64,000 bases of DNA, from positions 124,001-188,000 of the IMG/VR virus record IMGVR_UViG_3300032050_000004, one strand, 5' to 3'. Made by a program: the position numbers and the translations under genes. Positions 34,065 through 63,798 of the stretch are shown here, piece after piece. Below the pieces are notes generated by a model, which made no database searches, was not told the DNA's origin, and saw only the letters and a list, made by a program, of their open reading frames with translations. Within the stretch, counting starts at the first letter, position 1. Every line of letters begins with the position of its first letter.

Positions 34065-34823
34065 TTATTTTTTACCTTTAGAAGGTGATGTTGTTACAGG
34101 TGCGTGATTTGGTAATATATGATGACGACGTGTTCCAGAAACTCTTATTGAAGGGTGGGGTAACATTCTTTCTTCGTCTATCTCTTTTTTATTTTTTTTA
34201 TTAATTATAGCTTTTTGCAATTCATCTGGAAGTTCTGATTGTTTACCTTTAAGGGCAGGATCTTCATCGTATTTATCTGAAAATTCTAATTCTTCTTCTA
34301 AATCTTCATCAACTTCATCTAATGTTTTTGACACAGGTGAATGATATGGTAAATTTTCTTTATTTCTTCCCGGAGTTCTTGTTTTGTCAGGAAATGCTAA
34401 CATTCTCTCTTCCATATTAGCCCCTTTAGCACAACAATCATCACACCAAGTTTTTGCTTCATCTTCTGTGTCAAAATATTTATTATCGTCTACCTCACTA
34501 TTTTTGAAAACAATTGCTAAAAATTTATCAGAAGCATTTATTCCATCTCTTGGAGAGATTATTTTACTATCATATGAATCCATATCTTCCATATCAAAAT
34601 TCTCATCTTGATCTTCGGCTAATTTCTTTGCTTGGGCTGTAGCTATAGCGTAAGTTTTTGGAGTTTTTCCATACTTAGACTTAAGAGCTTTTACCAATTC
34701 TTCTTTCTTTTCTTCTTCGGCAGGTGTCAGGGGCCTTTCCTGAATATATCCGTCTCCGGGCATTTCAGACATAATTTTCCTAACTTCTTCTTTAATTAAG
34801 GATCTGATATCAATTTTTGCCAT
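34065..34823 (-). CDS. Putative head-internal modular protein
   Basis: N-terminal IRSLIKEEVRKIMSE tag, multiple [LIM]xE sites, and duplicated ERML..P..R..G.....LP.H.PV modules. Confidence 0.6.
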   Translation of the reverse strand: MAKIDIRSLIKEEVRKIMSEMPGDGYIQERPLTPAEEEKKEELVKALKSKYGKTPKTYAIATAQAKKLAEDQDENFDMEDMDSYDSKIISPRDGINASDKFLAIVFKNSEVDDNKYFDTEDEAKTWCDDCCAKGANMEERMLAFPDKTRTPGRNKENLPYHSPVSKTLDEVDEDLEEELEFSDKYDEDPALKGKQSELPDELQKAIINKKNKKEIDEERMLPHPSIRVSGTRRHHILPNHAPVTTSPSKGKK

Positions 34824-34858
34824 TATATTATCTTATTTAATAATAAATAGCAAGAAAA

Positions 34859-35185
34859 TTATTCTATTATATTAAGATTTTTTATACCTTCTTTTTTGAA
34901 AGATTTCATGTTTACATTTTTCGGATTCAATCCTTTTGACTCCAAAAATTCATTTAAAGTCATAAAAATGTCAGAATAATACTCTTTTATGCAGTTTTCA
35001 TAAGCAAGAAGTTGTTCTTGAGATAAACCCTCTGGATTAATCTCATAACCAGAAAGGTATTTTACATCATTTTTATTAAAGTCTTTGTAAGAATTAAAAC
35101 TTTCTTTTAAAAATGACGGATTAATAATAAGTCTTTCTGATTTTGATCCGTCTTCTTTTAGATATTCAAATTTAGCTTTTTTCAT
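34859..35185 (-). CDS. Hypothetical protein
   Basis: 108-aa ORF. Confidence 0.65.
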   Translation of the reverse strand: MKKAKFEYLKEDGSKSERLIINPSFLKESFNSYKDFNKNDVKYLSGYEINPEGLSQEQLLAYENCIKEYYSDIFMTLNEFLESKGLNPKNVNMKSFKKEGIKNLNIIE

Positions 35186-35256
35186 ATTACTATAATTTTC
35201 ATAGATAAAAGTAAAAATTTTTTATAATATTTACTAATAAACAAAACAAAAACATT

Positions 35257-35472
35257 ATGGATACTTTAACAACAACAGTAGCAGACAGCATTTCGACAGC
35301 AGTAACAAACAATGTTCCTAGTTTCGGAATTTTTGAGCAATTAGCCAATTACGGTGCCTTAGGATTAGCAGCTTTAGCTTTAGGAGCAGTATGTTGGATA
35401 TTCATCAAAAGACATTTAGATGAAAAAGACAGATTGCAGAGAAAATTAGATGAAATGGATAAGAACAAATGA
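35257..35472 (+). CDS. Small single-TM holin-like protein (paralogue 1)
   Basis: One TM segment plus charged coiled tail; shares PSFGIFExLxxYGALG with the next ORF. Confidence 0.55.
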   Translation: MDTLTTTVADSISTAVTNNVPSFGIFEQLANYGALGLAALALGAVCWIFIKRHLDEKDRLQRKLDEMDKNK

Positions 35473-36551: not shown

Positions 36552-36556
36552 AATTT

Positions 36557-37979: not shown

Positions 37980-38501
37980 TTGTTAGATAAATTAAATATA
38001 GTGAAAGATAATCATTTAATGTGTGGTTTTGAATCAATTAAGGATTTGGTAAAAAGTGCTTTTGGATTAGACCATATTTATACAAACACAGTAATCGCTT
38101 CAATAGGAGCTATATCAACATTTATAACATCATATATATATGATGATGCTCAAGCAATTTATGTATTACTCGGGTTTATAGCTTTTGATTCTTTGACAGG
38201 AATTTTAAAAGCTTTTAAACAAAATATATTTTCTTCAGCCAAATTACCCAGAATATTAGTTATTATGGTATTGTATGTTTCTTTGTTGAGTTTGGGTTGG
38301 AATTTGGCAAAAGTTGACGATATATTTAGTTGGTTACCGGGAACACTTTATTTTGGTTTTATTAGCACACTTGTAATTTCTATCATAGAAAACCTTCATG
38401 CTTTAAATGTAATTTCTGATGAAATATATAATCACATGAAGAAAAAAATGAAATTAGTCCAAGAAATATTTTTTGGGAAAGGTAAGTCAAGAAACGATTA
38501 A
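37980..38501 (+). CDS. Phage holin (toxin secretion/phage lysis holin-like)
   Basis: Three or four TM segments, FDSLTGILKA..FSSAKL, ISIIENL, and a basic C-terminus. Confidence 0.75.
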   Translation: MLDKLNIVKDNHLMCGFESIKDLVKSAFGLDHIYTNTVIASIGAISTFITSYIYDDAQAIYVLLGFIAFDSLTGILKAFKQNIFSSAKLPRILVIMVLYVSLLSLGWNLAKVDDIFSWLPGTLYFGFISTLVISIIENLHALNVISDEIYNHMKKKMKLVQEIFFGKGKSRND

Positions 38502-41500
38502 ACAATTATTTTTCTGAATGGGGCAGAATTAGTGAAATTCAAGAACCCTTTTTTATTTTTAAAGAACTTTGTTACATAAAAACAATTTGTCTCTAAAATC
38601 AATCTCATCCTTTCATATAGATCATTGTTCATGGTAACCTTTTTGGTTGCAGCACCATCAGAAATTGTCAAAACATAATAATTTGATCCATCCCATTGAG
38701 CAGTTTTTTTCTCAATATGATTTATCATAAAATAATAAAATTTATTTGTATCCTCAAAATTCAAGGCTGAATCTATATTTAGACCAGTTGCTTTCATGAA
38801 TTGTTCTTTTACACTCGCTATTTTATTTAATAAATTTAAATCTAATGAACAAATTTCTAGAAACTGATCATATCTAATCTGATCTGTAGTCTTTTCAAAA
38901 TCTTTATTTTTAAATTTTCTTTCAGCAACCGTCAAAACTGTATCGACATCGTTTGTGAACATATCTAATTGGTTGCTTTGCTTATATTTTATCTGTTTCA
39001 TTTCTATGAGTTCTTCTCTAGAATTTGACCAATCATCAAACAAACCAGCTTTCAAACATGATTCAAAATTTGTTTTATTGAATTTAGACCATTTTGTTGA
39101 GAAAAACATTTCTTTATCCATTAATTCGACTCTGTTATTCTTTAATTCTTTGAAAGCTATTTCTCCCATACCATTTATTGAAGAATAACCCATAGCAATA
39201 ATTTTATCTTCAATAATCGTCCAATCCCAGTTTGATTTTCTATTAGGAGGAACAATTTTTATTCCTTTCGACATTGCAGATAAAAGTGCTGAATTTAACC
39301 ATGCTTTATTTTTTTCATCATCATTACCAGTTTTTGGATGATTTAGAAGAGCACAATAAAATTCAGTTGGATAATAATGTTTTAAAAATAATGTTTGTGC
39401 TGCAACATAGCTATAACTCAAACTGTGACTCAAATTAAATGAATAGCCAAGATATTTAATTAACCAAGATTCAATTTTTTCAACGTCTTCTACAGACAAG
39501 CCTTTTGCAATCGCACCATCGATGAATTTTTTCCACAAATCCTTATAGGATTTGTAATTTTTATTATTTTCTTCATCATTTGATAACTCTTTTCCCTCTA
39601 ATTTTTTTGATATTATCTTACCTGCACCATCCATTGCCTTACGCAAATTATCCCCTTCACCTAAACTCATTCCTCCTATTTGATTAGCAATAAACATCAA
39701 TTGTTCTTGATATATTAAAACTCCATTTGTTTTTTCTAACAGTGGAGCTAATATACTATGGGCATAAGTTCTTTTTTCAGGCTCAAATTTATTTTTAATA
39801 AATTCTTCATGAGCCTTAATTCCCATCGGTCCGGGACGATACAATGCGTTTGCTGCTACTAATTCGTCAAAATTTTCGCATTTCATAGATTTTAACATTG
39901 CATTCATACCTTCAGACTCAAACTGAAAAATACCTTGATTAAAACCTAATCTCAATTCATCATACAGATTTTTATCTTCTAAATTAACATAATCTACTTC
40001 TAATTGGACCTTATCACCTATTTCATCTCCATGTCTTTCTCTTATATATTTTATGCAATCTTTTATAACGTTTAATGTTTCTAATTTTAAACGATCAAGT
40101 TTTAATATACCAATAGAAGAAAGGTCTTTTGCATTTCCTGATTCTTGGAAACCAGAAACTATTTGACCTTTGCAAATATTAACTGGCATACTCTCCCAAA
40201 TTGGGCCCGGTGTTATTACAATTCCAGCAGCATGTTTTCCAAGATTTCTTAATTGACCTTGTAATTTTAATGTATTATCAATAACCTCTTTATTGTGTGG
40301 ATCTAAAATCCACTTCCTTACCCTATCGCTACACATAGGATCATTTGGCCAATGTATTAACCATTCCTCAAGCGAAGAATCCCATTTTGTTGGCATTTCC
40401 TTAGTGACGGCAAAAATATCACTTTCGAATCCAGTGTCTTGACCTAGAGCTCTAGCAACATCTTTTATACAACCTTTTTCATTGAAGGTTCCAAACGTAA
40501 TTACTGGAACTACACGTTCTTTTCCATATTTTCCATAAAGAAAATTTAATGTCTTTTCATCTGTGCCAGCTTCAAAATCTGTATCAATATCCGGCATAGA
40601 TTTTCTCTCTGGATTTAAGAATCTTTCAAAATATAAATCAAATCTTACAGGATCAATTTTTGTAATATCTAAACACCATGATAATAAGCTTCCGGCAGCG
40701 GAACCACGTCCCGGACCTGTTGCTATATCATTATCTTTACAAAATCTAATTAGCTCCCAAACGACCAAAAAATAATCAAGTACTTTTTTATCTTCAATAA
40801 CTTTTAACTCATAATCTAGACGGTCATAATAAATTTTTTCTTTTTCGTAATCAATTTTTACAACACCCGTCTTTTCGTAATCCTTTAATTTTTGTTTTAA
40901 TTTAGCTTTAGATAGTTTTTGAATTATTTCTATTGTGTTATCTGTTTTAAAATATTTTATAACATCAGGTGTAGGTTCATATTTAGGGTACTTATCATCG
41001 GTCATTTCAAATTCAAAATTGCATTTTTCAGCGACCTTCAAAGTATTATCTAAACAAAAGTCTACATAGTGTTCAGGATAATTAAAACCTAAACGTTTAT
41101 TCATTTCGTGAAAATTCTCGAAATTTGTATAATATAATTCTCTTGCTTGTAATGAAAACGCTCTTCCTACTGGTTGACTTTGGTTTATTGCAATTAAAAT
41201 ATCCTGTAATCTATTATCTTCCGGCATAGCATAATGAACGTCCCCAGTTAAAATTGGTTGTAAATCATGCTTTTTAATCATTTTTAAAATGAATTTATTA
41301 TAGATTTTTTGTTCTTCAATTTCATTAAATTGAAGTTCTGCATAAAAATCATCACCAAATTCTCTTTTAAATAATAAAATTCTTTCTTCAGCTTCTTTTT
41401 CTTTACCCTCAGATATCAATCTGGCAAATTTTGATGCCATACAGGAGGATGTAACAATTAATCCTTTTTTATTTTCAATTAACCACTCAGTAGTAATTCT

Positions 41501-41908
41501 TCCTTTATAATAATATCCTTCAGTAAATGATCTATAAATTAATTTATTTAAATTTACATACCCTTCCTGATTTTTTATAATAATAGATTGATGAGTATTT
41601 TTGGCTGAATTATCAATACTTTCAGCTTCTTCTTTCGGTATATTTTTATCTAAATTATCATTTAAATAAGCTTCCATACCGAGAATAGGTTTTATTCCAG
41701 CAGATTTACACTTTTGAAAATGTGTCAACCAACCAGAAGCATTACCATGGTCCAATATTGTGATTGCTGGATGATTAAATTCTTTAGCTAATTTTACGTA
41801 ATTAGCTGATTTTGAAGCTCCATCTAAAGTTGAAAAATCAGTGTGTAAATGTAAATGCACCATCGGACGGTGCTTGCATCTTGGATTATTACAACTGCAA
41901 TTTGGCAT
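38498..41908 (-). CDS. dnaE: DNA polymerase III alpha subunit (family C)
   Basis: PHP domain HLHLHTDFSTLDG, GPGRGSAAGSL, FERFLNPER.SMPDIDTDF, KHAAGIVI, LKLDRL, and YRPGPM. Confidence 0.96.
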   Translation of the reverse strand: MPNCSCNNPRCKHRPMVHLHLHTDFSTLDGASKSANYVKLAKEFNHPAITILDHGNASGWLTHFQKCKSAGIKPILGMEAYLNDNLDKNIPKEEAESIDNSAKNTHQSIIIKNQEGYVNLNKLIYRSFTEGYYYKGRITTEWLIENKKGLIVTSSCMASKFARLISEGKEKEAEERILLFKREFGDDFYAELQFNEIEEQKIYNKFILKMIKKHDLQPILTGDVHYAMPEDNRLQDILIAINQSQPVGRAFSLQARELYYTNFENFHEMNKRLGFNYPEHYVDFCLDNTLKVAEKCNFEFEMTDDKYPKYEPTPDVIKYFKTDNTIEIIQKLSKAKLKQKLKDYEKTGVVKIDYEKEKIYYDRLDYELKVIEDKKVLDYFLVVWELIRFCKDNDIATGPGRGSAAGSLLSWCLDITKIDPVRFDLYFERFLNPERKSMPDIDTDFEAGTDEKTLNFLYGKYGKERVVPVITFGTFNEKGCIKDVARALGQDTGFESDIFAVTKEMPTKWDSSLEEWLIHWPNDPMCSDRVRKWILDPHNKEVIDNTLKLQGQLRNLGKHAAGIVITPGPIWESMPVNICKGQIVSGFQESGNAKDLSSIGILKLDRLKLETLNVIKDCIKYIRERHGDEIGDKVQLEVDYVNLEDKNLYDELRLGFNQGIFQFESEGMNAMLKSMKCENFDELVAANALYRPGPMGIKAHEEFIKNKFEPEKRTYAHSILAPLLEKTNGVLIYQEQLMFIANQIGGMSLGEGDNLRKAMDGAGKIISKKLEGKELSNDEENNKNYKSYKDLWKKFIDGAIAKGLSVEDVEKIESWLIKYLGYSFNLSHSLSYSYVAAQTLFLKHYYPTEFYCALLNHPKTGNDDEKNKAWLNSALLSAMSKGIKIVPPNRKSNWDWTIIEDKIIAMGYSSINGMGEIAFKELKNNRVELMDKEMFFSTKWSKFNKTNFESCLKAGLFDDWSNSREELIEMKQIKYKQSNQLDMFTNDVDTVLTVAERKFKNKDFEKTTDQIRYDQFLEICSLDLNLLNKIASVKEQFMKATGLNIDSALNFEDTNKFYYFMINHIEKKTAQWDGSNYYVLTISDGAATKKVTMNNDLYERMRLILETNCFYVTKFFKNKKGFLNFTNSAPFRKIIV

Positions 41909-52265: not shown

Positions 52266-52343
52266 ACAAATATTTCTTATAATAAATAGTAATAAAATTC
52301 ATTTTTTTTTACTATTTATTATTAAATTTTAAAAAATAAAAAA

Positions 52344-52769
52344 ATGAAAATATCTAAATCTGATTTGGAACAATTAATTAAAGAAGAAGCCATCAAAATG
52401 TTCCAAATTCAAAAACTTGAAGAAGCACAAAACAAAATTAATAATGAACTTCAATTAATTTCTGAGGGCAAAAAGAAAATGTCAGACGAAGAATTGAACG
52501 AACTTATAGCAGGTTTAAAAAGTGTTTTTGGTGCTGGGGCTAAAAAAGCTGGAGAAGCAATTGCCGGGGCTGGCGAAAAAGCAAAAGAATTAGGTGGTAA
52601 AATAGCATCTAAATATAAAGAAGGTGAGCAGACAGCAAAAATTGCTAAAATGGAAAAGCAAAGAGATGAAATAGTTGTTAAAATAAAACAATTAGCTGAT
52701 CAATATAAACAATTGACTGGTAAAAGATATTCTATGATTGGACAGAAAATTTCTCCAGTTGTAGCTTAA
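52344..52769 (+). CDS. Putative head-internal protein
   Basis: N-terminal KISKSDLEQLIKEE tag with LEE/ISE/LNE sites; has its own promoter motif and terminator. Confidence 0.6.
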   Translation: MKISKSDLEQLIKEEAIKMFQIQKLEEAQNKINNELQLISEGKKKMSDEELNELIAGLKSVFGAGAKKAGEAIAGAGEKAKELGGKIASKYKEGEQTAKIAKMEKQRDEIVVKIKQLADQYKQLTGKRYSMIGQKISPVVA

Positions 52770-52898: not shown

Positions 52899-53459
52899 AT
52901 GCAAAATATTGATTATGAAGAGATAATTCAGAAACAAACACGACCCGGAAAAAAAATTAAAATAAATAATAAATTAATTGATAATAAAAATATTTCCGTT
53001 GATATTGGTACAGTAGATAATAAAAATTGCCCTAAAACTGTTTATTTAAACATTAGTTTTTGGGTAGATATAAAAAATAGAGAAAATAAGGATTTCGATG
53101 AAGATTTCGATAGAAATATTTCAAAAGAATTTTCAAAACATTTGAAAAGAATTTACAAAAGTGATCTATATGATTTTCTTACAGATAATAGATTTTTCCC
53201 TTTTTATTATGAAAATATTTACTCTTTTGATTTTCCAGAAAATTTAAATTATAATAATAAAAAGAGCTTTGTTAGTATAGAAATTCATTTACACACAATT
53301 AATAATAATATCTATTCTAAAAACTTAAGTGATTATTATACTTTGAAGAATGATATAAAAAATGACTTTTTCTACGAATTAATAACTATAGCTAACATAG
53401 TTGGTAATAGTGACTTATTAAGAGAAAAAGAAAATTTCTATATTTCTAAAAAGAAATAA
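52899..53459 (+). CDS. Hypothetical protein
   Basis: 186-aa ORF upstream of the prohead protease. Confidence 0.7.
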   Translation: MQNIDYEEIIQKQTRPGKKIKINNKLIDNKNISVDIGTVDNKNCPKTVYLNISFWVDIKNRENKDFDEDFDRNISKEFSKHLKRIYKSDLYDFLTDNRFFPFYYENIYSFDFPENLNYNNKKSFVSIEIHLHTINNNIYSKNLSDYYTLKNDIKNDFFYELITIANIVGNSDLLREKENFYISKKK

Positions 53460-53509
53460 AATAATTATTGTTTTTTTTGATCTATTTATTGGTAATTAAC
53501 AAATTATCA

Positions 53510-54163
53510 ATGAATAATCTCGATAATAAATATATTATTTCTGAATTTTTGGCAATCGATCCAGATGTACAGAAAATAAATGAGGCTATTGCTAAAAATG
53601 AGCCTATAATCGTTCCATGTATTTTACAAAAAGCCAACACTCTGAACAGAAATGGTAGAGTTTATCCATTCGATATTTTAAAAAGAGAGGTAGATAAATA
53701 TCAGCAATTAGTAAAAGAGAGAAGTGCAATGGGTGAGTTGGATCACCCGGATTCTGCTGTTATTTCCCTAGCAAATGTATCTCACATTGTAACAGAAATG
53801 TCATGGAAAGGTGAGGTTTTATATGGAAAAATTCAGATCGCAGATACACCTGCAGGCGACACTGTGAAAGGTCTTTTAAAAAGTGGTATCAAATTAGGTA
53901 TTTCATCTCGTGGTGTAGGTTCTGTAAAGAAAAACAGAGAAGATCAAGATGTTGTTCAGGAAGATTTTGAATTAATTGGTTTTGATATTGTTTCATCACC
54001 TTCAACACCCGGAGCTTATTTATTTAAGGAATCTAAGCAGTGGGGTATGAAAAAATTAATTGATTCTGATACTAAATTAATTAAGACAGATGAGGTTAAA
54101 AATAAAATTAAAAACCTAAAAAATAGTTTGAGTAATTTATCTAAAGATAGTTTCTGGAACTAA
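53510..54163 (+). CDS. Prohead core protease (T4 gp21-like)
   Basis: NRNGRVYP, GELDHP, VSH, GISSRGVGS, and FDIVSSPSTPGA. ATG 53510 preferred over TTG 53468 because the promoter motif lies between them. Confidence 0.95.
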   Translation: MNNLDNKYIISEFLAIDPDVQKINEAIAKNEPIIVPCILQKANTLNRNGRVYPFDILKREVDKYQQLVKERSAMGELDHPDSAVISLANVSHIVTEMSWKGEVLYGKIQIADTPAGDTVKGLLKSGIKLGISSRGVGSVKKNREDQDVVQEDFELIGFDIVSSPSTPGAYLFKESKQWGMKKLIDSDTKLIKTDEVKNKIKNLKNSLSNLSKDSFWN

Positions 54164-54257
54164 TAATTAAAAAAATAAATTGAAAAAAATAAAAAAAATA
54201 TAATTTATAAATTTTTTTTCTATTTATAACAAAATATCTATTATTTAAATAAATAAT

Positions 54258-55769
54258 ATGTTAAATAAAAACATCATAAAAGATGCATTAGCTGATGCTA
54301 AAGAAATAGAGAAGTTTGCTATTGAGCAAGCTAAAAAGTCTTTAGAAGAAGCATTGATGCCTCAAATAGAAAAGGCTATTCAAGAAAGCCTACAAGAAAA
54401 TAAATCAGAACAATTTATTTCTGAAGAATCGGAAGTTAATAATATTAATGAAAATATTATAACATCTGAAAATTTAATTTCTGAAAATACAAATTCAAAA
54501 AATATACAAGAAATGTACAACGAAAAAGAAGAAACAAACGAAGAATTATATGAGGTTGAAGGTCTTTTTGAAGATGAAACTGCCCAAGAACCTGCTGAGG
54601 CTTCGTTAGAGTCTAAACTCGATGCTATGGCTGCAAAGCTTGATACATTAATAGCAGCTGCTCAAGGTAGCGAAGAAACTTCTGCCGAAGGTGAAGTTGA
54701 AGTTGTAGACGATGAAGCTGCTGCTCCCGCAGAAGCTCCTGCTGCTGCTCCAGCTGAAGCACCAGCTCCTGCAGAAGCTCCGGCTCCTGCTGCACCAGCA
54801 CCAGCACCTGCTGAACAACCTACCGTTACAGAAGATACTATGTTCGAAATCGAAATGGAAGAAGATATGGAAGAAGGTCTTTTTGAAATGGAAGAAGATA
54901 TGGAAGAGGGTGATAAAGTTTATGAAATAAATGTTGAGGAAGATATGGAAGAAGAAGGTTGGAATAAAGTTGAAGAAGATATGGAAGAAGGTATGTATGA
55001 AATCAATTTAGAAGAAGATATGGAAGAAGAAGGTATGTATGAAATTGAAATGGAAGAAGATATGGAAGAAGGAGAAGAAGGTGTTGATCCGAAAACAGGA
55101 TTACCACTTCCTCCAAAAGAATTTGGTGGAATTAAAGGTGGAATGTTTGGAGAAGACATGGAAGAAGGAATGTTTGAAATTGAAATGGAAGAAGACATGG
55201 AAGAAAATACCATGCAAAATTTAGTAAATACACATAGAGCAAAAGAAAGAGGTAAAAGACAACCGGGATATGTTTCTCCTGCATCTGTAGCTTCAATCAA
55301 TGAATCTAAGAAAATAAAAGCTCAATATGAGTCTAAAGTAGACGAGCTTATAAAGGAAAACGCTAGTTTGAAAAACGTGATCAAAAATTACAAGTCGAAT
55401 TTGAAAGAATTTGAAAATTCATTTGTAGAATTAAAATCACAACTTAATGAAATGCAGATTTTCAATGGAAAATTAGCTTATGCAAATAAGCTTTTGACCA
55501 AAGGAGGATTGACAAATGACGAGAAAATTAGAATAGCTGAGGAATTTGATAAGTGTGCAACTGTTGAAGATGCAAAAAAACTTTACAACAAAATCATCAG
55601 TGAAAACACCTTCTCTTCAAAAAACAATTCTACGGATAAATTGAAATCTGTAAAGCCAAGCACGGCTGTTCAAAATCTTTCTGAAAATAAAACTGAAAAG
55701 TTATTTGAAAGTGAAGAGAGAAGAAGAATGAGAATGCTCGCTGGTATCGTAAAACCAATAAATGAATAA
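54258..55769 (+). CDS. Prohead scaffold/core protein (gp22-like)
   Basis: Lies between protease and capsid genes; very acidic, coiled-coil C-terminus, ends RMRMLAGI. Confidence 0.8.
   Translation: MLNKNIIKDALADAKEIEKFAIEQAKKSLEEALMPQIEKAIQESLQENKSEQFISEESEVNNINENIITSENLISENTNSKNIQEMYNEKEETNEELYEVEGLFEDETAQEPAEASLESKLDAMAAKLDTLIAAAQGSEETSAEGEVEVVDDEAAAPAEAPAAAPAEAPAPAEAPAPAAPAPAPAEQPTVTEDTMFEIEMEEDMEEGLFEMEEDMEEGDKVYEINVEEDMEEEGWNKVEEDMEEGMYEINLEEDMEEEGMYEIEMEEDMEEGEEGVDPKTGLPLPPKEFGGIKGGMFGEDMEEGMFEIEMEEDMEENTMQNLVNTHRAKERGKRQPGYVSPASVASINESKKIKAQYESKVDELIKENASLKNVIKNYKSNLKEFENSFVELKSQLNEMQIFNGKLAYANKLLTKGGLTNDEKIRIAEEFDKCATVEDAKKLYNKIISENTFSSKNNSTDKLKSVKPSTAVQNLSENKTEKLFESEERRRMRMLAGIVKPINE
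54715..55206 (+). repeat. APAEAPA tract followed by about 9 copies of (xEIxx)EEDMEEG
   Basis: Recurrent GAAGAAGA(T/C)ATGGAAGAAGG at the DNA level. Confidence 0.85.
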
Positions 55770-55785: not shown

Positions 55786-57405
55786 ATGTCTGAATTATTA
55801 AACAGCGGACAAGTTGGTATGACCGTATTACGCAACTTGTCTGAACAAAGAAAACAAATCGTTAAGAACTGGGAAAACTCAGGTCTTCTCGAAGGTATTG
55901 CCGGTCAAAAAAAAGCTAACATCGCTCAATTGTTAGAGAACCAAGCATCTCACATGCTTAATGAGGTAACTCTAGATAGTTCTGCAGGTCGTTTCGACAC
56001 TGTTGCATTTCCGATGGTAAGACGTATCTTCTCAAGATTACTTGCTTCTGAAATCGTATCAGTTCAACCTCTTGCTTTACCTTCTGGTTTGTTATTCTAT
56101 ATGGACGCTCAAGTATCTTCTGATAAAGTAGCTCCTTATTCTATAGCAAATTCTGGTGGTGGTTCTGGTCCTACATTCCCTAACAAATCTGCTTACGAGC
56201 GTTTCTATGACAATCGTGGATATGATGCATCTTGGGGTGCTGCAACTCAGCGTGTAGGTTCTGCAATCAGCATCGGTTCTGGTTCTACTACAACTGGTTT
56301 GATTGCTACGGCTGTAACATTAAGCTCTAATTTTGATGTAACTCTTAATCAGTCTTACACTTCTTTAGTACTTTCTGCTAATACAGCTATTGCTTACAAC
56401 GGTGTGGCTTTATTTGCTGCAGGTCAAACAGGTGTTACATTCTACTCTAATTTACAGACTTATGGTGCTGAATTAGTACAGAGTAACACTCCGGGTAACG
56501 TGAACAACATCTATAACATTGTTATCGATTTACGTCCTGCTCCAACTTCTACTGCTGCTTATTCATGGGTACAATCTGGATTAACTGCAGGTGTTGGTGG
56601 TGTAGGTGCTGGTATCATCCTTACTCCGATGTTCTACACTTACAACACGATTGAGGCTAGTCCAAACATGTCTGAATTAACTCTTCGTTTCTCTTCTGTA
56701 ACTGTAAACTCAATTACAAGAAAAATGAGAGCACATTGGACACCTGAATTAGCTCAAGATTTAGAAGCATACCACTCAATTGATGCTGAGGCTGAATTGA
56801 CAGCTTTATTGTCAGAAGAAGTTGCTGCTGAAATCGATCGTGAAATCATCCGTGATCTTGTTATCGGTGCTATGTTCGAAGCTCGTTGGGATTACCAAGG
56901 CTTACGTGACAACGTAAACTTCTTCGGTACTCAGAAAGACTGGAACCAAACTCTTATCACTCGTATCAACGAAATTTCTGCCCAGATCCACAAAGCTACC
57001 CTTCGTGGTGGTGCTAACTGGGTTATCTGTTCTGCAGAAGCTGGTGCGATCTTCGATGATCTTGAGTACTTCCATGTAGATTCTTCTGCATCACCTGAGA
57101 CTGAAAAGTATAACTTAGGTATGGAAAAAATCGGTAACTTAGGTAACCGTTATGTAGTGTACAAAGATCCTTACATGCCTGCTAACATCGTGTTGGTTGG
57201 ACACAAAGGTAATACCTTCCTTGAGGCTGGTTACGTGTACGCTCCTTACATTCCTCTTCAATTAACTCAGACGATCTACGATCCGAATGACTTTACACCT
57301 CGTAAAGGTATCATGACTCGTTATGCGAAGAAGATGATCAACAACCGTTTCTATGGTGTGATCTACCTTGACAATCTTAACACTTATACTCAGGTATATA
57401 GCTAA
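55786..57405 (+). CDS. Major capsid protein (T4 gp23-like)
   Basis: AQLLENQ, VSVQPLALPSGLLFY, WTPELAQDL.AYHSIDAEAEL, EIDREII, YAPYIPL, and PRKGIMTRY; strong high-expression codon bias (CGT, AAC, ATC, TTC). Confidence 0.97.
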   Translation: MSELLNSGQVGMTVLRNLSEQRKQIVKNWENSGLLEGIAGQKKANIAQLLENQASHMLNEVTLDSSAGRFDTVAFPMVRRIFSRLLASEIVSVQPLALPSGLLFYMDAQVSSDKVAPYSIANSGGGSGPTFPNKSAYERFYDNRGYDASWGAATQRVGSAISIGSGSTTTGLIATAVTLSSNFDVTLNQSYTSLVLSANTAIAYNGVALFAAGQTGVTFYSNLQTYGAELVQSNTPGNVNNIYNIVIDLRPAPTSTAAYSWVQSGLTAGVGGVGAGIILTPMFYTYNTIEASPNMSELTLRFSSVTVNSITRKMRAHWTPELAQDLEAYHSIDAEAELTALLSEEVAAEIDREIIRDLVIGAMFEARWDYQGLRDNVNFFGTQKDWNQTLITRINEISAQIHKATLRGGANWVICSAEAGAIFDDLEYFHVDSSASPETEKYNLGMEKIGNLGNRYVVYKDPYMPANIVLVGHKGNTFLEAGYVYAPYIPLQLTQTIYDPNDFTPRKGIMTRYAKKMINNRFYGVIYLDNLNTYTQVYS

Positions 57406-57460: not shown

Positions 57461-57475
57461 ATTTAATATTTATAT

Positions 57476-58228
57476 ATGATGGCTTCGAATAATTTAAATA
57501 AAACAATAAAGTATTTAAAAAATAAGAAAAAAATACTTTTTTTAACCACATCGAATAGATGGGTGGACAGTCAAGAAATACCTAAATCAAGTCAATTAGC
57601 AAATCATATTGCTGAAAAAGTAGGTATGGATAAAGTAACTATTATCGATATCACAAAATTAAAGATTTATCCTTGTGAGGGAAATGTATCTAGTGTTACA
57701 GGGAATGGTTGTGGAGCAAAAGATTCAGCTTTGAAAGATGAAAAAAAGAATCCTAGTGGCAATCATAGATGTTGGGCAAGTATTAATAATCCTGATGATG
57801 AATTATGGAAAGTTTCTAAAAATCTTTTTGAGTCAGATGTAGTTGTTTTTTTCTCTTCCTCAAGGTGGGGTCAAACAAATGCTTATTATCAAAAATTAAT
57901 TGAAAGACTTACTTGGATAGAAAATATTCACGCTGCTTTTGAAGAAAAGAATTTAGTTGAAAATATTGAAGCTGGTTTTATAACTGTAGGTCATAATTGG
58001 AGAGCAAAAGAGATTATAGAAGTTCAAAAAGATGTTTTAAAATTTTTTGGCTTTAAAACACCAAATGAACTTTTTTGGGGTTATCAATATACAATGGATG
58101 CTAATGATGAAACAGCCGAGTCTTACAGAAAAACTATTCCAGCTTTCGAAAAATTATATGGTTTTATTCTTAATAAAACTGCCATACACGAAATAAAATT
58201 ATCTATAAAGAAATTACTAAAATTTTAA
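57476..58228 (+). CDS. Flavodoxin-like NADPH-dependent FMN reductase / iron-sulfur flavoprotein family
   Basis: LFLTTSNR, IYPCEGNVS..C..CW Cys cluster, SDVVVFFSSSRWG, and QKLIERL. Confidence 0.75.
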   Translation: MMASNNLNKTIKYLKNKKKILFLTTSNRWVDSQEIPKSSQLANHIAEKVGMDKVTIIDITKLKIYPCEGNVSSVTGNGCGAKDSALKDEKKNPSGNHRCWASINNPDDELWKVSKNLFESDVVVFFSSSRWGQTNAYYQKLIERLTWIENIHAAFEEKNLVENIEAGFITVGHNWRAKEIIEVQKDVLKFFGFKTPNELFWGYQYTMDANDETAESYRKTIPAFEKLYGFILNKTAIHEIKLSIKKLLKF

Positions 58229-58233: not shown

Positions 58234-59235
58234 ATGGACAGAATTAATTTAAAGGAATTAGATTTTTTAATTAAAAATCATTTAGACCAACTAAATGAAG
58301 CTTTAATTGCTGGTGAAAATATTGATTCTGGGGATTTTATCGTAAAAAACTCAGAAAAAGATAAATTAACTGGTGAATTATCTAATGATCTTAAATACCT
58401 TTTTAAAATAACAGAATTTACAAAGTCTGGAAAAGCTTTAGTTATTAAACCGGATCAATTACAGAAATGGAGAAATTCAACTAATGTGGATAGATCTTTA
58501 ATGTCTAAAGAAGTAAATCTTAATGATTATGATGTTGTAAATGTAGAAGATGAATATTTAAATTTTCCAGAATCATTACTAGATGAAGGAAAGGTAAAAT
58601 CTTCCAAAACTAAATCAGGAAGAAAAGTACCCGGAAAATATCTTACAAAAGATAAAGCTGCAATGAAAGGTGAAATTGAAAGAGTTTCTAAATTAAAATC
58701 TGATGACCCTTCTGCATATGGAAAATGGGAAGCAGATTATAAAGCAAGAAATACAAAATCAGGCAAACCTCATAAAACAAAAAAAAGTGCTGCTACTATA
58801 GCTTATGAGAAAAAGTTTGGTAAAAAAAATGAAAACATAGATATGAAAAACGAATTAATAACTGAAGATATTGACAAAGCTTTGGCAAATAAAGCAAAAG
58901 CATCAGGAATCTCTAAGTCTATTTTAAAAAGAGTATATTCGAAAGGAGCAGCTGCTTGGAAAAGTGGACATCGTCCCGGTGTTTCTCAACAACAATGGGC
59001 TATGGGTCGCGTAAATTCATTTATCACTGGAAGTGGTGGTGCAAGAAAAGCTGATGCAGACCTTTGGGCAAAAGCCAAAAAATCCAAGAAAAGAAAAAAT
59101 GAGAATCTTGAAGAGGAATTGTTAAGAAGAAAAATACGAGAAATTATAAGCGAAGAATATTTCACCAAAGAAGAATTGGATGAATTATATCCTATGTTAG
59201 TAGGTGAGGACGAAATTAATAATGAAGAGGAATAA
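58234..59235 (+). CDS. Putative head-associated protein with DUF5824-like domain
   Basis: ALANKAKASGIS..ILKRVYSKGAAAWKSGHRPG..QQQWAMGRVNSF; tag-like helices at both ends. Confidence 0.6.
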   Translation: MDRINLKELDFLIKNHLDQLNEALIAGENIDSGDFIVKNSEKDKLTGELSNDLKYLFKITEFTKSGKALVIKPDQLQKWRNSTNVDRSLMSKEVNLNDYDVVNVEDEYLNFPESLLDEGKVKSSKTKSGRKVPGKYLTKDKAAMKGEIERVSKLKSDDPSAYGKWEADYKARNTKSGKPHKTKKSAATIAYEKKFGKKNENIDMKNELITEDIDKALANKAKASGISKSILKRVYSKGAAAWKSGHRPGVSQQQWAMGRVNSFITGSGGARKADADLWAKAKKSKKRKNENLEEELLRRKIREIISEEYFTKEELDELYPMLVGEDEINNEEE

Positions 59236-59634: not shown

Positions 59635-59644
59635 AATAAATAAA

Positions 59645-60040: not shown

Positions 60041-60046
60041 GATATG

Positions 60047-60500: not shown

Positions 60501-60537
60501 TATTTTTATGTATTTTATTGATTATCAATAAGTTACA

Positions 60538-60729
60538 CTATTCTTCATTTTTAAAAAATTCCCTAATTAATAGAAAAATAAGACCAAAAATTGCAATAAT
60601 ATTAATAGAAGCTATTAAATAAAGGATCCATTTATAAGTAAAAATTAAGTATAGGAAAAGAAACATCAAAAATATAGCAAATATATAACTTGCTAATTGG
60701 GCAATTTTGTCCTCTAAGAGCATTTTCAT
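60538..60729 (-). CDS. Small two-TM membrane protein
   Basis: 63 aa, two hydrophobic helices; overlaps the upstream stop. Confidence 0.55.
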   Translation of the reverse strand: MKMLLEDKIAQLASYIFAIFLMFLFLYLIFTYKWILYLIASINIIAIFGLIFLLIREFFKNEE

Positions 60730-61514: not shown

Positions 61515-61587
61515 TTTATTAAATTATATACTAATAAATAATTTGTTTTTTTAATTTTAATAAATTATAGATTATTTATATTTAACC

Positions 61588-62760
61588 ATGGAAATAAGAG
61601 AATTAATAAAAAAAGTAATTAAAGAGTCTTTTTTAACAGAAAATGAAGTTAAAAGAATAGATTTTAGCTACCCTTTACCTGATGATTTAAATAAATTGAA
61701 GAATTATTTCGATGAGAATAATTTTGAACTTTTTGTAGTAGGTGGAGCCGTGCGTGATATGATCTTAGGTAAGGAACCTAAAGACATAGATTTAGTATCT
61801 GATGCTACTCCTGATGACGTAAAAAGGATTTTACCAGATGAATATAGAATAATTCCCAAAGGAGAAGCTTTTGGTATCCTTCAAATAATTACTCCAGAAG
61901 GTGGTGATTACGAGATTGCTCGTTATCGTGAGGATATTGGAAAAAAAGATGGAAGAAGACCAGATTCGGTCAAATTTTCTACTATTGATTCAGATGCTTT
62001 AAGAAGGGATTTAACAATTAATGCTCTATATTACGATATAAATAAAAATCAAATTATAGATTTTGTTAATGGTTATGAAGATATTCTCAAAAGAAATATT
62101 AAAACTGTTGGTAAAGCAGAAGATAGATTTGAAGAGGATCGATTAAGAATATTGAGAGCATTTAGATTTGCAGCTAGATTTAATTCAAACTTAGATCAGG
62201 ATATAATAGAGGCTTTAAGAAAAAATAATTCTCTAAAAGGGGTATCTGAAGAGAGAATTAGAGATGAATTCCTTAAAGGTATAAAAAGTGCTCAATCTGT
62301 TGTAAAATTCCTTACCGATTTAGAAAATTATGGATTACTAAAACAAATTTTAGATGATTTGAATTATAGTCAATCTGAATTCGTAGAATCAAAAGATTAT
62401 ATCGTGTTATTGGCTAATTTACTTAAAAATAATCCAGTTCATAAAATTCAAACTATTCTTAATAATCTTAAATATACAACTGATGAAATAAGAAAAATTA
62501 TTTTCCTTGTTTTGTTTTTAAATTTCGATCCTGAATCTGTATATAATTTTAAAGTAAAAGAAAATGTTTCGAAAATATCTCCAGAAGAATTAAAGGAATT
62601 TGCCAGAATAAATTCTATAAATTCAAATATGGTAGATAAATTCATAGATTTTAAATTATCTGTTTCAGGGGATGAACTTTTACAGAAGGGATTCAAGGGA
62701 GCATCATTAGGAAAAGAAAAAGAAAGATTAGAGACTGTTAACTTCCTTGATACTCTTTAG
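61588..62760 (+). CDS. cca: Class II tRNA nucleotidyltransferase (CCA-adding enzyme)
   Basis: VGGAVRD..LGKEPKDIDL, DGRRPDSV loop, RRDLTINAL, and EDRLRILRAFRF; no HD domain and no obvious poly(A) polymerase signature. Confidence 0.88.
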   Translation: MEIRELIKKVIKESFLTENEVKRIDFSYPLPDDLNKLKNYFDENNFELFVVGGAVRDMILGKEPKDIDLVSDATPDDVKRILPDEYRIIPKGEAFGILQIITPEGGDYEIARYREDIGKKDGRRPDSVKFSTIDSDALRRDLTINALYYDINKNQIIDFVNGYEDILKRNIKTVGKAEDRFEEDRLRILRAFRFAARFNSNLDQDIIEALRKNNSLKGVSEERIRDEFLKGIKSAQSVVKFLTDLENYGLLKQILDDLNYSQSEFVESKDYIVLLANLLKNNPVHKIQTILNNLKYTTDEIRKIIFLVLFLNFDPESVYNFKVKENVSKISPEELKEFARINSINSNMVDKFIDFKLSVSGDELLQKGFKGASLGKEKERLETVNFLDTL

Positions 62761-62781
62761 TTTTTTCGACTATTTATTTAC

Positions 62782-63798
62782 ATGAAAAAGGATAAAATTC
62801 CCGGAGGCAAAGCAAAAGGCAAATCTTTAAAAGATATTGCGATTATGCACTGTAAATCTGATTCAAAAAACAAATCAGATGAAAGAAAAATTGAAAAAAT
62901 GTTAGACCATTTAAAGTTGGAATTAAAAAAAGGGATTAAAACTGAATTGGAACATACAACCAGTGAAGAATTTGCCAAAGAAATAGCTATGGATCATTTA
63001 TATGAAGATCCAAAATATTATACAAAACTTTTAAAAATTGAAGAAATGAAAAAAACAAAAAAAATAAACATCAACGATATATCTGAAATGGTTAAGAAAG
63101 CTCTTAATGAAGAATTTGTTGGTGGTGTAAATTATGATAATGTTTTAGCAACTGAACTAAAAGAAAAAGTTGGTGATTTAAGCAAATTAACTCCTTATGT
63201 TTTAGAACTAGGTAATGAAATTCAATCAGATTCATCTGGTAAAATTCATGTTTATGATGAGGGAAAAAAAGTTAAGATATTCAACAATATTGATGACTTT
63301 TTAAAAGGTATCAAATACGGTCCTGTTAGAATTACCGAAGAAGATTCTTCAATGCCACATAAAGATCATGAAGCTATGATGGCAAAAGGAGAAATCAGAG
63401 ATATGGTTAAAAATGCAAAAGAAGTTTATAAAATGATTCAACCCGGTGATGAACTTCCCGGATGGATTTCTGCTTATATTACTTTAGCTTCAGATTATAT
63501 GCATAGCATCGCTGAATACATGACTGAAAAACATAGTGGTGGTGAAGAACTAACTGAAGATACAGAAGATGCACCAAAGAAATTAACAATGGATCAATTT
63601 TGTGAATGGTTAGGTTTGCCAACAGATAAAGTTCAATTAGGAATTGAAATTGCAAAGGTTTCAGACCCGGATGGAGCATACACTCACTTACAGGATATGG
63701 GTGAAGATGAAGCAGCGGAAGCAATAGAAGCCATATATTTTGAACATGGTTCTCTTAAAGAAGCAATTGCTGCTTGTAAAGAAGATTTAGGCATTTAA
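62782..63798 (+). CDS. Putative head-associated modular protein (DUF5661-like N-terminal module)
   Basis: GIKTELEHT....AKEIAMDHLYEDPKYYTKL module, then further modules separated by IEE/LNEE/ITEE/LTE. Confidence 0.6.
   Translation: MKKDKIPGGKAKGKSLKDIAIMHCKSDSKNKSDERKIEKMLDHLKLELKKGIKTELEHTTSEEFAKEIAMDHLYEDPKYYTKLLKIEEMKKTKKININDISEMVKKALNEEFVGGVNYDNVLATELKEKVGDLSKLTPYVLELGNEIQSDSSGKIHVYDEGKKVKIFNNIDDFLKGIKYGPVRITEEDSSMPHKDHEAMMAKGEIRDMVKNAKEVYKMIQPGDELPGWISAYITLASDYMHSIAEYMTEKHSGGEELTEDTEDAPKKLTMDQFCEWLGLPTDKVQLGIEIAKVSDPDGAYTHLQDMGEDEAAEAIEAIYFEHGSLKEAIAACKEDLGI

What the first reader, a model, noticed from the sequence alone, without database searches (positions are those of the whole stretch)
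34065..63798. Shared short tag on unrelated late proteins: a candidate capsid-loading address cleaved by the prohead protease
Seen: at least six otherwise unrelated proteins carry a similar ~20-aa amphipathic helix that ends in, or is flanked by, [LIM]-x-E. They are MAKIDIRSLIKEEVRKIMSE (34823-), MKISKSDLEQLIKEEAIKM..KLEE (52344+), MDRINLKELDFLIKNHLDQLNE and C-terminal LEEELLRRKIREIISEE (58234+), MEIRELIKKVIKESFLTE (61588+), internal KININDISEMVKKALNEE (62782+), and, more weakly, C-terminal IHEIKLSIKKLLKF (57476+). Five of these genes have the TATTTAT motif directly upstream; 58234 follows 57476 by 5 nt. Known: T4 gp21 cleaves head proteins after (L/I)-x-E, and T4 internal proteins enter the prohead through a short cleaved targeting peptide. 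The capsid (MLNE/VT), protease (IISE, KINE) and scaffold here show the same kind of site. Inference: the tag is a portable module, usable at either terminus or internally, that recruits cargo to the scaffold for packaging and injection.
Basis: partly seen in the sequence, partly recalled or inferred. Interest (0 to 1): 0.88.

Follow-up and report, generated by a model that had tools for sequence, protein, structure and literature searches.

The report
Shared capsid-address tag on phage proteins
A roughly 22-residue N-terminal peptide (consensus MKITKSQLKQIIKEEL..L.E) sits on thousands of unrelated proteins of uncultured T4-like ("Far-T4") phages, next to their head-assembly genes, and is most likely an address label that loads proteins into the capsid and is then cut off by the head protease.

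Summary

**In the window**
- Two N-terminal tags are significant: 52344 (canonical) and 34065.
- The N-terminal helices of 61588 (CCA-adding enzyme) and 58234 (DUF5824) are diverged versions, supported by their homologues.
- The internal copy in 62782 is supported by collinear stand-alone homologues that start with the tag.
- The C-terminal "tags" of 57476 and 58234 score no better than chance.

**Outside the window**
- A profile search found 11,319 protein clusters.
- Only 15 stretches matched in 596 Gb of genomes, all on MAG contigs.
- Cargo is hyperdiverse, often small, and often in tandem arrays.
- 48 of the 120 loci carry a T4-type portal, protease or major capsid gene within a few kb, on the same strand as the tagged genes.
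- In 62% of tags an unconstrained hydrophobic-x-Glu (phi-x-E) triplet ends at residue 21 or 22. The commonest triplets are LNE and LSE, the same as the inferred capsid maturation site (MLNE|V).

**Verdict**
The best reading is an analogue of the T4 capsid-targeting sequence, not a homologue of it. Packaging, cleavage and injection are all inferred; none was shown. This is a new variant of a known kind. Interest is about 0.7.

The parts
52344..52424 (+). Canonical tag MKISKSDLEQLIKEEAIKMFQIQKLEE at the N-terminus of a 141-aa protein (52344-52769) that lies 1.1 kb upstream of the prohead protease gene.
   Evidence: Scores 20.3 bits with the independent IMG/VR tag HMM, against a shuffled maximum of 4.9. 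It matches the DNA pattern used. A sense TATTTAT lies 24 nt upstream.
34764..34823 (-). Tag variant MAKIDIRSLIKEEVRKIMSE|MPG at the N-terminus of a 252-aa acidic, probably disordered protein (34065-34823) next to the baseplate genes.
   Evidence: Scores 9.6 bits with the HMM and 15.5 bits with the relatives' matrix. Most full-length family members (P0121-P0153) keep an N-terminal tag variant ending in phi-x-E followed by M/V-P-G/D/E. TATTTAT lies 19 nt upstream.
61588..61641 (+). Diverged tag-like helix MEIRELIKKVIKESFLTE|N on a CCA-adding tRNA nucleotidyltransferase (61588-62760).
   Evidence: Pfam PolyA_pol starts at residue 48. The matrix gives 11.6 bits; the strict HMM is negative. The extension is conserved down to 46% identity. 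Tagless variants start exactly after it, and some homologues carry it internally after an extra domain. The AF2 model shows helix 2-16 at low confidence, residues 12-18 below pLDDT 50, and a confident core from about residue 21. PDB homologues and the listed cultured-phage homologues mostly align only from residue 26-49 onward; three Brevundimonas phages align from residue 6.
58234..58299 (+). Probable diverged tag MDRINLKELDFLIKNHLDQLNE|A on a DUF5824 protein (58234-59235), which follows 57476-58228 by 5 nt and is probably co-transcribed with it.
   Evidence: LNE sits at residues 20-22, the modal position and triplet of canonical tags. The segment is conserved in L002. A DUF5824 homologue in L166 starts with the canonical MKITKGQLRNIIRE. 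The tag models do not detect it (1.6 bits).
63061..63114 (+). Internal tag copy KININDISEMVKKALNEE in 62782-63798, which reads as DUF5661 domain + tag + linker + a conserved C-terminal domain.
   Evidence: Residues 94-275 are collinear with stand-alone 176-201-aa proteins (L036, L072, L132). Their N-terminal tags align with this segment. The score alone (12.2 bits) is at chance level for internal positions. Phage immuto has a DUF5661 protein with an N-terminal tag.
59107..59157 (+). C-terminal tag-like segment LEEELLRRKIREIISEE of 58234-59235. Unproven.
   Evidence: Scores 10.9 bits, which is chance level. It is in register with the N-terminal variant KRLREILSEEI. In the L002 orthologue about 170 more residues follow it.
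53510..54163 (+). Prohead protease of the T4 gp21 / Peptidase_S77 type. The probable start is the ATG at 53510.
   Evidence: Pfam PF03420 at 8e-30 and phrog_207 at 2e-54. It is 35% identical to T4 gp21. TATTTAT lies 20 nt upstream of the ATG.
54258..55769 (+). Scaffold-like protein (503 aa) between the protease and capsid genes. Its C-terminal motif RMRMLAGI lies at 55725-55748.
   Evidence: It sits where T4 gene 22 sits. It has the highest [LIM]-x-E density in the window, 36 sites or 7.2 per 100 aa against a mean of 1.47. The C-terminal R-M-K-x-L-A-G-I motif is present in most scaffolds examined in this clade, including immuto and Mel-JY01; the two most distant relatives, L015 and L017, lack it.
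55786..57405 (+). Major capsid protein of the gp23 type. The inferred maturation site MLNE|V is at residues 57-60 (55954-55965).
   Evidence: Pfam Gp23 at 1e-72. In the alignment, T4 gp23 FLTE|A aligns with MLNE|V here; the site is MLNE in relatives down to 49% identity and MLSE in L017.
52313..52319 (+). One example of the late-promoter-like TATTTAT motif. Others: 34843-34849 (-), 53483-53489, 54221-54227, 57467-57473, 61573-61579, 62771-62777.
   Evidence: A sense copy lies within 45 nt upstream of 17 of 48 genes, about 1 expected. All 17 are structural or late-like. None is a replication gene.

Best explanation
The peptide is a capsid-targeting, prohead-core address tag of the Far-T4 phage clade. 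It is functionally analogous to the T4 capsid-targeting sequence (CTS).

The tag is an amphipathic helix of about 22 residues: M-K-I-T-K-x-Q-L-K-Q-I-I-K-E-E-L-x-x-phi-L-x-E, followed by a disordered linker.

**Proposed steps, all inferred.**
1. Tagged proteins are made late.
2. The helix docks them into the scaffold core while the prohead assembles.
3. The gp21-type protease cuts after I-K-E and/or after the terminal L-x-E, the same type of site as the capsid propeptide.
4. The free cargo stays in the head and enters the host with the DNA, or is degraded if it is only a core component.

**Shown here.**
- The tag exists and is overwhelmingly N-terminal.
- It is carried by more than 100 unrelated cargo families.
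- It is conserved at the protein level.
- It is confined to phage-like contigs.
- It is genomically linked to the portal and protease genes.
- It ends in a positionally fixed phi-x-E.
For: **Reality and scale.**
In 166 of them there is no in-frame ATG upstream.
- The loci have 30-55% GC.
- Residues the pattern did not constrain are also conserved: Q7 62%, K/R9 85%, and a hydrophobic residue at position 16.
- Synonymous codons vary freely at the conserved residues.
- The profile search found 11,319 clusters at E<=1e-3 among 1.84 billion representatives.

**Portability.** After the tag is removed, 165 proteins fall into 141 BLAST clusters. Tag carriers near the window fall into at least 9 unrelated families.

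**Link to head assembly.**
- 48 of 120 tag loci have a T4-type portal (43), protease (22-23) or major capsid gene (3) within the fetched few kb, on the same strand.
- The tagged gene often lies directly between portal and protease, the position of T4 genes 67 and 68.
- One tagged protein, L010_709, also carries the scaffold's C-terminal RMKxLAGI motif.

**Cleavage-site logic.**
- 62% of tags have phi-x-E ending at residue 21 or 22, against about 2% per position further downstream.
- The top triplets are LNE and LSE, the same as the inferred capsid site MLNE|V or MLSE|A.
- The scaffold has the highest site density in the window.

**Evidence in the window.** Tagged genes share the TATTTAT motif with structural genes, and no replication gene is tagged. 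The CCA enzyme's tag is modelled as a detached helix on a flexible link.

**Phage specificity.** Only 15 stretches matched in 596 Gb of genomes. All are MAG contigs, and some carry a portal gene or homologues of the window's phage genes.

**Precedent.** T4 CTS biology, as described in PMC9958956 and PMC5694885.
Against: - No virion proteomics exists for any tag-bearing phage, so packaging, cleavage and injection are all untested.
- The tag has no sequence similarity to the T4 CTS.
- It does not resemble the scaffold N-terminus.
- [LIM]-x-E is common in these proteomes.
- Most tagged genes on long contigs are not next to head genes. IMG/VR's selection of short contigs favours hallmark genes, which inflates the 40% figure. 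On my own tally from the tables, among contigs of at least 50 kb with at least 5 kb fetched, it is 6 of 15 against about 8% expected.
- Some cargo, such as the CCA-adding enzyme and polynucleotide kinase, has no obvious need to be delivered.
- In the CCA family the helix also occurs internally after extra domains, so there it might be part of the enzyme.
- Inside the window alone, the similarity is not above chance.
Confidence: 0.6

Rival explanations
1. The tag is an assembly helix of accessory scaffold or core proteins (functional analogues of T4 gp67 and gp68). These proteins build the prohead core and are degraded and expelled. In this reading they are not delivered cargo, and nothing is injected.
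For: - Many tagged genes are small (median 105 aa), acidic or disordered, and sit between portal and protease, like T4 genes 67 and 68.
- L010_709 combines the tag with the scaffold's C-terminal motif.
- T4 gp67 contains the string IDLIKEEKI.
Against: - The cargo includes folded enzymes: the CCA-adding enzyme, a kinase and a GNAT acetyltransferase.
- 141 of 165 cargos are unrelated to one another, which suits effectors under diversifying selection better than structural parts.
- There is no homology to gp67 or gp68.
Confidence: 0.2
2. The helix docks proteins to some other phage or host machine unrelated to the capsid, for example a chaperone, a protease adaptor, a ribosome or tRNA-repair complex, or a replication compartment.
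For: - In L028 the tag sits on a CCA enzyme and a polynucleotide kinase, inside a tRNA and translation gene cluster with no head genes nearby.
- Most tags on long contigs are not adjacent to head genes (my tally from the tables).
- The helix is retained internally in CCA fusion proteins.
Against: - It does not explain the several-fold enrichment next to portal and protease genes on the same strand.
- It does not explain the fixed L-x-E at the tag end, which matches the capsid maturation site.
- It does not explain the co-occurrence with the scaffold C-terminal motif.
Confidence: 0.12
3. The similarity is a by-product of composition. AT-rich genomes give Lys/Ile/Glu/Leu-rich amphipathic helices and A-rich 5' coding ends, so the similarity is chance or selection at the mRNA level.
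For: - The pairwise test within the window is not significant.
- Internal matrix hits occur at the chance rate.
- The 57476 C-terminus and the 58234 C-terminal segment are not distinguishable from chance.
Against: - Canonical tags occur in loci of up to 55% GC, with free synonymous variation.
- The chance expectation for the DNA pattern is far below one match per collection (my estimate from its degeneracy), yet more than 186 matches were found.
- The HMM scores for 52344 and 34065 exceed every shuffle.
Confidence: 0.03

Closest known systems
T4 capsid-targeting sequence (CTS) of internal proteins IPI, IPII, IPIII and Alt (Mullaney & Black 1996, as reviewed in PMC9958956 and PMC5694885)
   Same: - A short N-terminal peptide shared by otherwise unrelated proteins.
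- It ends in hydrophobic-x-Glu.
- The phage has a gp21-type protease and a gp23-type capsid protein.
- The cargo genes are variable.
- In the T4 record, ipII and ipIII both start MKTYQEFIAE|A.
   Different: - No sequence similarity.
- About twice as long (22 aa against 10).
- Two candidate cleavage sites rather than one.
- Used on thousands of cargo families and in tandem arrays and fused multi-tag ORFs.
- Found in a deep sister clade whose portal is about 32% identical to those of T4-like and cyano-myophages.
- Function untested.
T4 prohead core proteins gp67 and gp68, and the gp23/gp24 propeptides
   Same: - Genes between portal gene 20 and protease gene 21, which is also where many tagged genes lie.
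- The gp24 propeptide MAKINELLRE|S is a short N-terminal helix removed at L-x-E.
   Different: - No detectable homology to gp67 or gp68.
- In the window the portal gene is not adjacent, and a 186-aa gene lies between the tagged gene and the protease gene.
Long propeptides of giant phages phiKZ, 201phi2-1 and SPN3US (PMC5694885)
   Same: Head and ejection proteins carry N-terminal propeptides removed by a gp21-like protease at x-x-Glu. These are thought to target the proteins into the prohead.
   Different: - Those propeptides are mostly longer than 100 aa.
- They are cut at Ala/Ser/Gly-x-Glu.
- They are not a single conserved sequence shared by many cargos.
Scaffold C-terminal coat-binding peptides (phage P22) and encapsulin cargo-loading peptides
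   Same: A short terminal peptide is enough to load cargo into an HK97-fold shell. The second motif seen here, R-M-K-x-L-A-G-I at scaffold C-termini and reused on other proteins, looks like this type.
   Different: The comparison is by analogy and from general knowledge only. There is no homology, and no binding partner was tested.

Membership tests
T4-type capsid-targeting sequence (functional class) | A short N-terminal peptide shared by otherwise unrelated proteins of one phage lineage. | tested here: met
   166 of 186 matches have no in-frame ATG upstream. The 165 cargos fall into 141 clusters. There are at least 9 unrelated families near the window.
T4-type capsid-targeting sequence (functional class) | The phage encodes a gp21/S77 prohead protease and a gp23-type capsid protein with a cleaved propeptide. 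| tested here: met
   Pfam S77 at 8e-30 and Gp23 at 1e-72. The site MLNE|V aligns with T4 FLTE|A. 22-23 of the 120 tag loci show the protease gene nearby. Actual cleavage was not tested.
T4-type capsid-targeting sequence (functional class) | The peptide ends in the protease's (L/I)-x-E site. | tested here: met
   I-K-E is invariant at residues 12-14, but the search pattern imposed it. An unconstrained phi-x-E ends at residue 21 or 22 in 62% of tags, against about 2% per position further downstream. The top triplets are LNE and LSE.
T4-type capsid-targeting sequence (functional class) | The peptide is sufficient to target a protein into the prohead core, and gp21 removes it. | not testable with these tools
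   This needs virion mass spectrometry and tag-reporter packaging.
T4 CTS sequence family (MKTYQEFIAE) | Sequence similarity to the T4 IP leader. | tested here: not met
   The T4 ipI, ipII and ipIII N-termini score -7.8 to -11.4 bits with the tag matrix.
T4 gp67/gp68 prohead core proteins | Sequence homology to gp67 or gp68. | tested here: not met
   BLASTP E-values are all above 1.
T4 gp67/gp68 prohead core proteins | Gene position between the portal and protease genes, on the same strand. | tested here: inconclusive
   This holds for at least 14 tag loci. In the window, 52344 lies upstream of the protease gene but is separated from it by 52899-53459, and no portal gene is adjacent.
phiKZ/SPN3US long propeptides | A propeptide longer than 100 aa, cut at A/S/G-x-E. 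| tested here: not met
   The tag is about 22 aa and the residue two before the Glu is Leu, Ile or Val. The criteria are taken from PMC5694885.
Curated protein families (Pfam-A, PHROGs) | A model that covers the tag. | tested here: not met
   Of 63 tagged proteins, Pfam matched only one GNAT, one FliG_C and one EF-hand domain, and PHROGs matched two unknown families with one member each. No family is shared across the set.
RiPP precursor leaders (conserved leader, hypervariable core, tandem genes) | A small core peptide (<60 aa) with modification enzymes nearby. | tested here: not met
   Most cargo is about 50 aa or longer once the tag is removed, up to several hundred residues, and includes folded enzymes. 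The neighbours are head genes.

The most novel reading that the evidence does not exclude
A single 22-residue address label marks more than 11,000 protein clusters as capsid-loaded, host-injected cargo of the globally abundant Far-T4 phages. The cargo would include ready-made tRNA-repair enzymes (CCA-adding enzyme, polynucleotide kinase) and a large, fast-evolving arsenal of small effectors in tandem arrays and protease-processed polyproteins. If so, injected phage proteins could be predicted from sequence alone.
Probability: 0.35. Interest if true: 0.85.

Novelty: new variant of a known kind. Interest (0 to 1): 0.7.

Why it matters
**If the tag works as proposed.**
- It gives a sequence-only way to list the proteins that a large, mostly uncultured phage clade carries in its capsid and delivers into the host.
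- In T4 such proteins are counter-defence and takeover factors: IPI blocks GmrSD and Alt modifies RNA polymerase (PMC9958956).
- The tagged set would therefore be a rich, unexplored source of anti-defence candidates.
- Packaged tRNA-repair enzymes would be a new kind of delivered cargo.
- The tag could also serve as a packaging handle for protein delivery, as the T4 CTS has.

**If the tag does not work as proposed.** The motif is still one of the most widespread uncurated peptide modules in viral metagenomes. No Pfam or PHROG family was shared across the tagged proteins scanned, and a full-text search for the motif strings found no relevant paper.

Tried and rejected
1. **Composition artefact.** Rejected for the canonical tag: loci of 30-55% GC, free synonymous variation, and scores above every shuffle. 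It remains the best reading for the 57476 C-terminus.
2. **Unbiased N-terminal similarity inside the window.** Not significant. The case rests on external data.
3. **Homology to the T4 CTS, gp67 or gp68.** None found.
4. **The tag mimics the scaffold N-terminus.** Scaffold N-termini score at the null level.
5. **A DNA-level promoter and leader cassette.** Upstream regions of the IMG/VR tags share no motif beyond Shine-Dalgarno-like sequence, and the codons vary.
6. **RiPP leader.** The cargo is too large, and some of it is enzymatic.
7. **Fetching tag loci with the search for related loci from tag alignments.** A degenerate DNA pattern was used in its place.
8. **tblastn of tags against 50,697 GenBank phage records.** No significant match. 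Short queries and the low-complexity filter limit this search. Phage immuto does carry a variant.
9. **Literature.** Searches for the motif strings found nothing, and the Far-T4 paper does not mention the motif.
10. **Strict canonical HMM on the CCA family.** Negative, with a maximum of 3.2 bits. The CCA helix is linked to the tag only by looser similarity and by context.
11. **Virion proteomics for immuto, Mel-JY01 or RM378.** None found in the held library.

Full report
**What the window is.**

The window is part of a 222-kb IMG/VR contig with about 30% GC. It carries:
- a replication block at 1865-8111: DnaB, FEN, a RecA-like protein and PolA;
- baseplate and tail genes, including two giant ORFs;
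- a Pol III alpha gene;
- fibre genes;
- a T4-like head module.

The head module runs as follows:
- a 141-aa gene at 52344;
- a 186-aa gene at 52899;
- a gp21/S77 protease at 53510-54163;
- a 503-aa scaffold-like gene at 54258-55769;
- a gp23-type capsid gene at 55786-57405.

The nearest cultured relatives are distant. By capsid protein they are Flavobacterium phage immuto and Microcystis phage Mel-JY01 (43%) and Rhodothermus phage RM378 (35%). This is the uncultured "Far-T4" clade of PMC4360716 (my assignment; that paper uses RM378 as its cultured reference).

**Checking the observation inside the window.**

Their significance is uneven.

- A comparison of all N-termini against each other within the window is not above chance.
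- A matrix built only from tags in related contigs gives three N-terminal hits of >=10 bits (52344, 34065, 61588) against 0.16 expected. The 52344 score is partly orthology, because one seed (L010_709) is its likely positional equivalent.
- The same matrix gives three internal hits, which is exactly the chance expectation.
- An HMM built from 69 canonical tags from unrelated metagenomes gives 20.3 bits for 52344 and 9.6 bits for 34065. The maximum over shuffled proteomes was 4.9.

So two tags are solid. The remaining examples need outside evidence.

**Outside evidence for the weaker examples.**

*CCA enzyme (61588).*
- Its roughly 20-residue N-terminal helix is conserved in homologues down to 46% identity.
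- A few homologues lack it and start exactly after it.
- Some have it internally, after an added domain.
- Solved CCA enzymes, and most cultured-phage enzymes listed, align only from residue 26-49 onward.
- An AlphaFold model (mean pLDDT 92) places it as a low-confidence helix. A flexible stretch (residues 12-18, containing FLTE) joins it to a confident core starting near residue 21.

*DUF5824 protein (58234).*
- It has LNE at residues 20-22.
- A DUF5824 homologue elsewhere starts with the canonical tag.

*62782.*
- Residues 94-275 are collinear with stand-alone proteins of 176-201 aa. Their N-terminal tags align with the internal KININDISEMVKKALNEE.
- This gene therefore looks like a fusion of a DUF5661 module with a tagged gene.
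- In phage immuto a DUF5661 protein carries the tag at its own N-terminus.

*The two C-terminal examples.*
- The 58234 C-terminal segment is plausible but at chance level. In the L002 orthologue about 170 more residues follow it.
- The 57476 C-terminus has no support.

**The tag is a large, undescribed module.**

I searched IMG/VR with a degenerate DNA pattern for M-K-I-[ST]-K-x-x-L-x-x-[LIMF]-I-K-E-E.

The chance expectation is far below one (my estimate from the pattern's degeneracy).
- 166 of the 186 matches have no in-frame ATG upstream.
- The ORFs have a median length of 105 aa.
- The loci span 30-55% GC.
- Positions the pattern did not constrain are also conserved (Q7, K/R9, Q10, hydrophobic 16, 19 and 20). 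After residue 22 the sequence becomes Gly/Asp/Glu/Ser/Pro-rich.
- Codons vary freely at the conserved residues.
- With the tag removed, 165 proteins fall into 141 clusters.
- Pfam and PHROGs recognise almost none of them, and no family is shared across the set.
- A profile search of 1.84 billion representatives found 11,319 proteins at E<=1e-3. The best-scoring ones hold 2-4 copies spaced about 133 aa apart, and each internal copy still begins with Met.
- Only 15 stretches matched in 596 Gb of genomes from 185,579 species. All are MAG contigs, and some carry a portal gene or homologues of this window's phage genes.

**Link to head assembly.**

- 48 of the 120 tag loci contain a T4-type portal (43), protease (22-23) or capsid gene (3) within the fetched stretch, on the same strand.
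- The tagged gene often lies directly between portal and protease, where T4 has genes 67 and 68. In other loci it lies just after the protease gene.
- IMG/VR's bias towards hallmark genes on short contigs inflates this figure. On my own tally from the tables, contigs of at least 50 kb with at least 5 kb fetched still give 6 of 15 against roughly 8% expected.
- These portals are closest to Mel-JY01 and immuto, the same clade as the window.
- The scaffold proteins examined in this clade mostly end in R-M-K-x-L-A-G-I; the two most distant relatives do not. The same motif occurs on a protein that also has the canonical N-terminal tag, and at the N-terminus of another family.

**Cleavage logic.**

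- Alignment with T4 gp23 puts the capsid maturation site at MLNE|V. It is conserved as MLNE in the closer relatives, MLSE in L017, and IVSE and LISE in immuto and Mel-JY01.
- 62% of tags have a hydrophobic-x-Glu ending at residue 21 or 22, against about 2% per position further on. The commonest triplets are LNE and LSE.
- In the 34065 family, the tag variants of most full-length members end in phi-x-E followed by M/V-P-G/D/E.
- The scaffold-like protein has the highest [LIM]-x-E density in the window, 7.2 per 100 aa against 1.47. That is what one expects of a gp22-like substrate.
- In the window, the tagged genes have the TATTTAT motif that also precedes head, fibre and baseplate genes: 17 of 48 genes, about 1 expected. 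No replication gene has that motif or a tag.

**Interpretation.**

The most economical reading is an analogue of the T4 capsid-targeting sequence. An N-terminal helix docks cargo into the scaffold core and is removed by the gp21-type protease.

The tag is not a sequence relative of the T4 CTS. It is also not a relative of gp67 or gp68, and it does not mimic the scaffold N-terminus.

Packaging, cleavage and injection are inferences. No proteomic data exist for this clade.

The main rivals are:
- the tagged proteins are expendable core components rather than delivered cargo;
- the helix docks to some non-capsid partner, which would fit the tagged CCA enzyme and kinase in a tRNA-repair cluster.

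**Verdict.**

The general idea is the best-supported explanation. The claim of use at either terminus is not supported, while internal use in fusion proteins is. The finding is a new variant of a known kind, at an unexpectedly large scale.

Noticed in passing
window 55725-55748; L010 709-1278, L010 3301-3783, L008 846-1331, L012 2742-3230; L030 13692-14933; L152 16728-17828: A second portable motif, R-M-K-x-L-A-G-I. It sits at the extreme C-terminus of the scaffold proteins examined in this clade, except the two most distant relatives (17 of 23 occurrences are C-terminal). It also sits at the C-terminus of a protein with the canonical N-terminal tag, and at the N-terminus (M-I-x-E-S-Y-K-x-R-[IL]-x-x-L-[AS]-G) of a 160-aa family. 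It may be a coat-binding peptide.
   Followed up: partly
P0163-P0312: Many database proteins hold 2-4 tag copies about 133 aa apart. Each internal copy starts with Met and is usually preceded by Lys, the AAA-ATG context of a start codon. They look like fused tandem tag-cargo genes, or polyproteins.
   Followed up: partly
window 30970-31155 (-): A 61-aa histone H1-like Hc1 protein (Pfam 2.7e-12) is encoded among the baseplate genes. It is a possible DNA-condensing virion protein.
   Followed up: no
window 13715-21457 (-) and 21515-29032 (-): Two adjacent giant ORFs (2580 and 2505 aa) have no Pfam family. Both are preceded by TATTTAT. The 2505-aa protein starts MDANQVKQLIKELKAAGT, which resembles the N-terminus of the 95-aa protein at 3299-3586 (score 35) but is not a significant tag hit.
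   Followed up: partly
window 6492-8111 (-) and 38498-41908 (-): The same phage region encodes both a family-A DNA polymerase and a bacterial-type Pol III alpha (DnaE with a PHP domain).
   Followed up: no
window 57467-57473, 59636-59642, 61573-61579, 62771-62777: At several genes the late-promoter-like TATTTAT lies only 1-8 nt from the ATG. This would imply leaderless or near-leaderless mRNAs, or a role other than promoter. Where it lies further upstream, a T-run usually precedes it.
   Followed up: partly
window 34065-34823 (-): The tagged 252-aa protein contains two copies of a short repeat, EERML-[AP]-[FH]-P...LP-x-H-[SA]-PV. It also contains a strongly conserved segment, LTPAEEKKKEELVKALKPKYGKTPKTYAIATAQAKKLAE, that is shared by many metagenomic proteins.
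   Followed up: partly
window 52899-53459 (+): A 186-aa protein with no family match lies next to or near the protease gene in most relatives where that side of the locus was captured, but its strand differs among them.
   Followed up: no
L155/L163/L166 (NHDW01000006.1, 305 kb) and L156/L161 (PBIO01000025.1, 101 kb): Contigs with 5-6 tags each are filed in MAGs named Methylococcaceae and Halobacteriovorax. They carry homologues of this phage's genes and are probably phage contigs binned into bacterial MAGs.
   Followed up: partly
L056 (IMGVR_UViG_GVMAG-S-1030632-100_000001): A contig labelled as a giant-virus MAG carries three canonical tags in tandem. It may be a misassigned phage contig.
   Followed up: no
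L030 5697-6698 and 6698-6997 (phage immuto): Two adjacent genes share a different N-terminal motif, M-x-(D)-N-F-[ND]-L-[RK]-x-F-L-x-E-N-K-L-T. It recalls the FLTEN at the end of the CCA enzyme's tag.
   Followed up: no
L028 7001-7402, 10001-11155, 17123-18067, 18487-19611: Another phage lineage clusters RF-1, a CCA enzyme, a polynucleotide kinase, a T4-type RNA ligase 1, ClpP and DnaJ. Only the CCA enzyme and the kinase carry the tag-like N-terminus.
   Followed up: partly
L152 15041-15268 (Mel-JY01): A ribosomal protein bS21 gene lies inside the head module, between the protease and scaffold genes.
   Followed up: no
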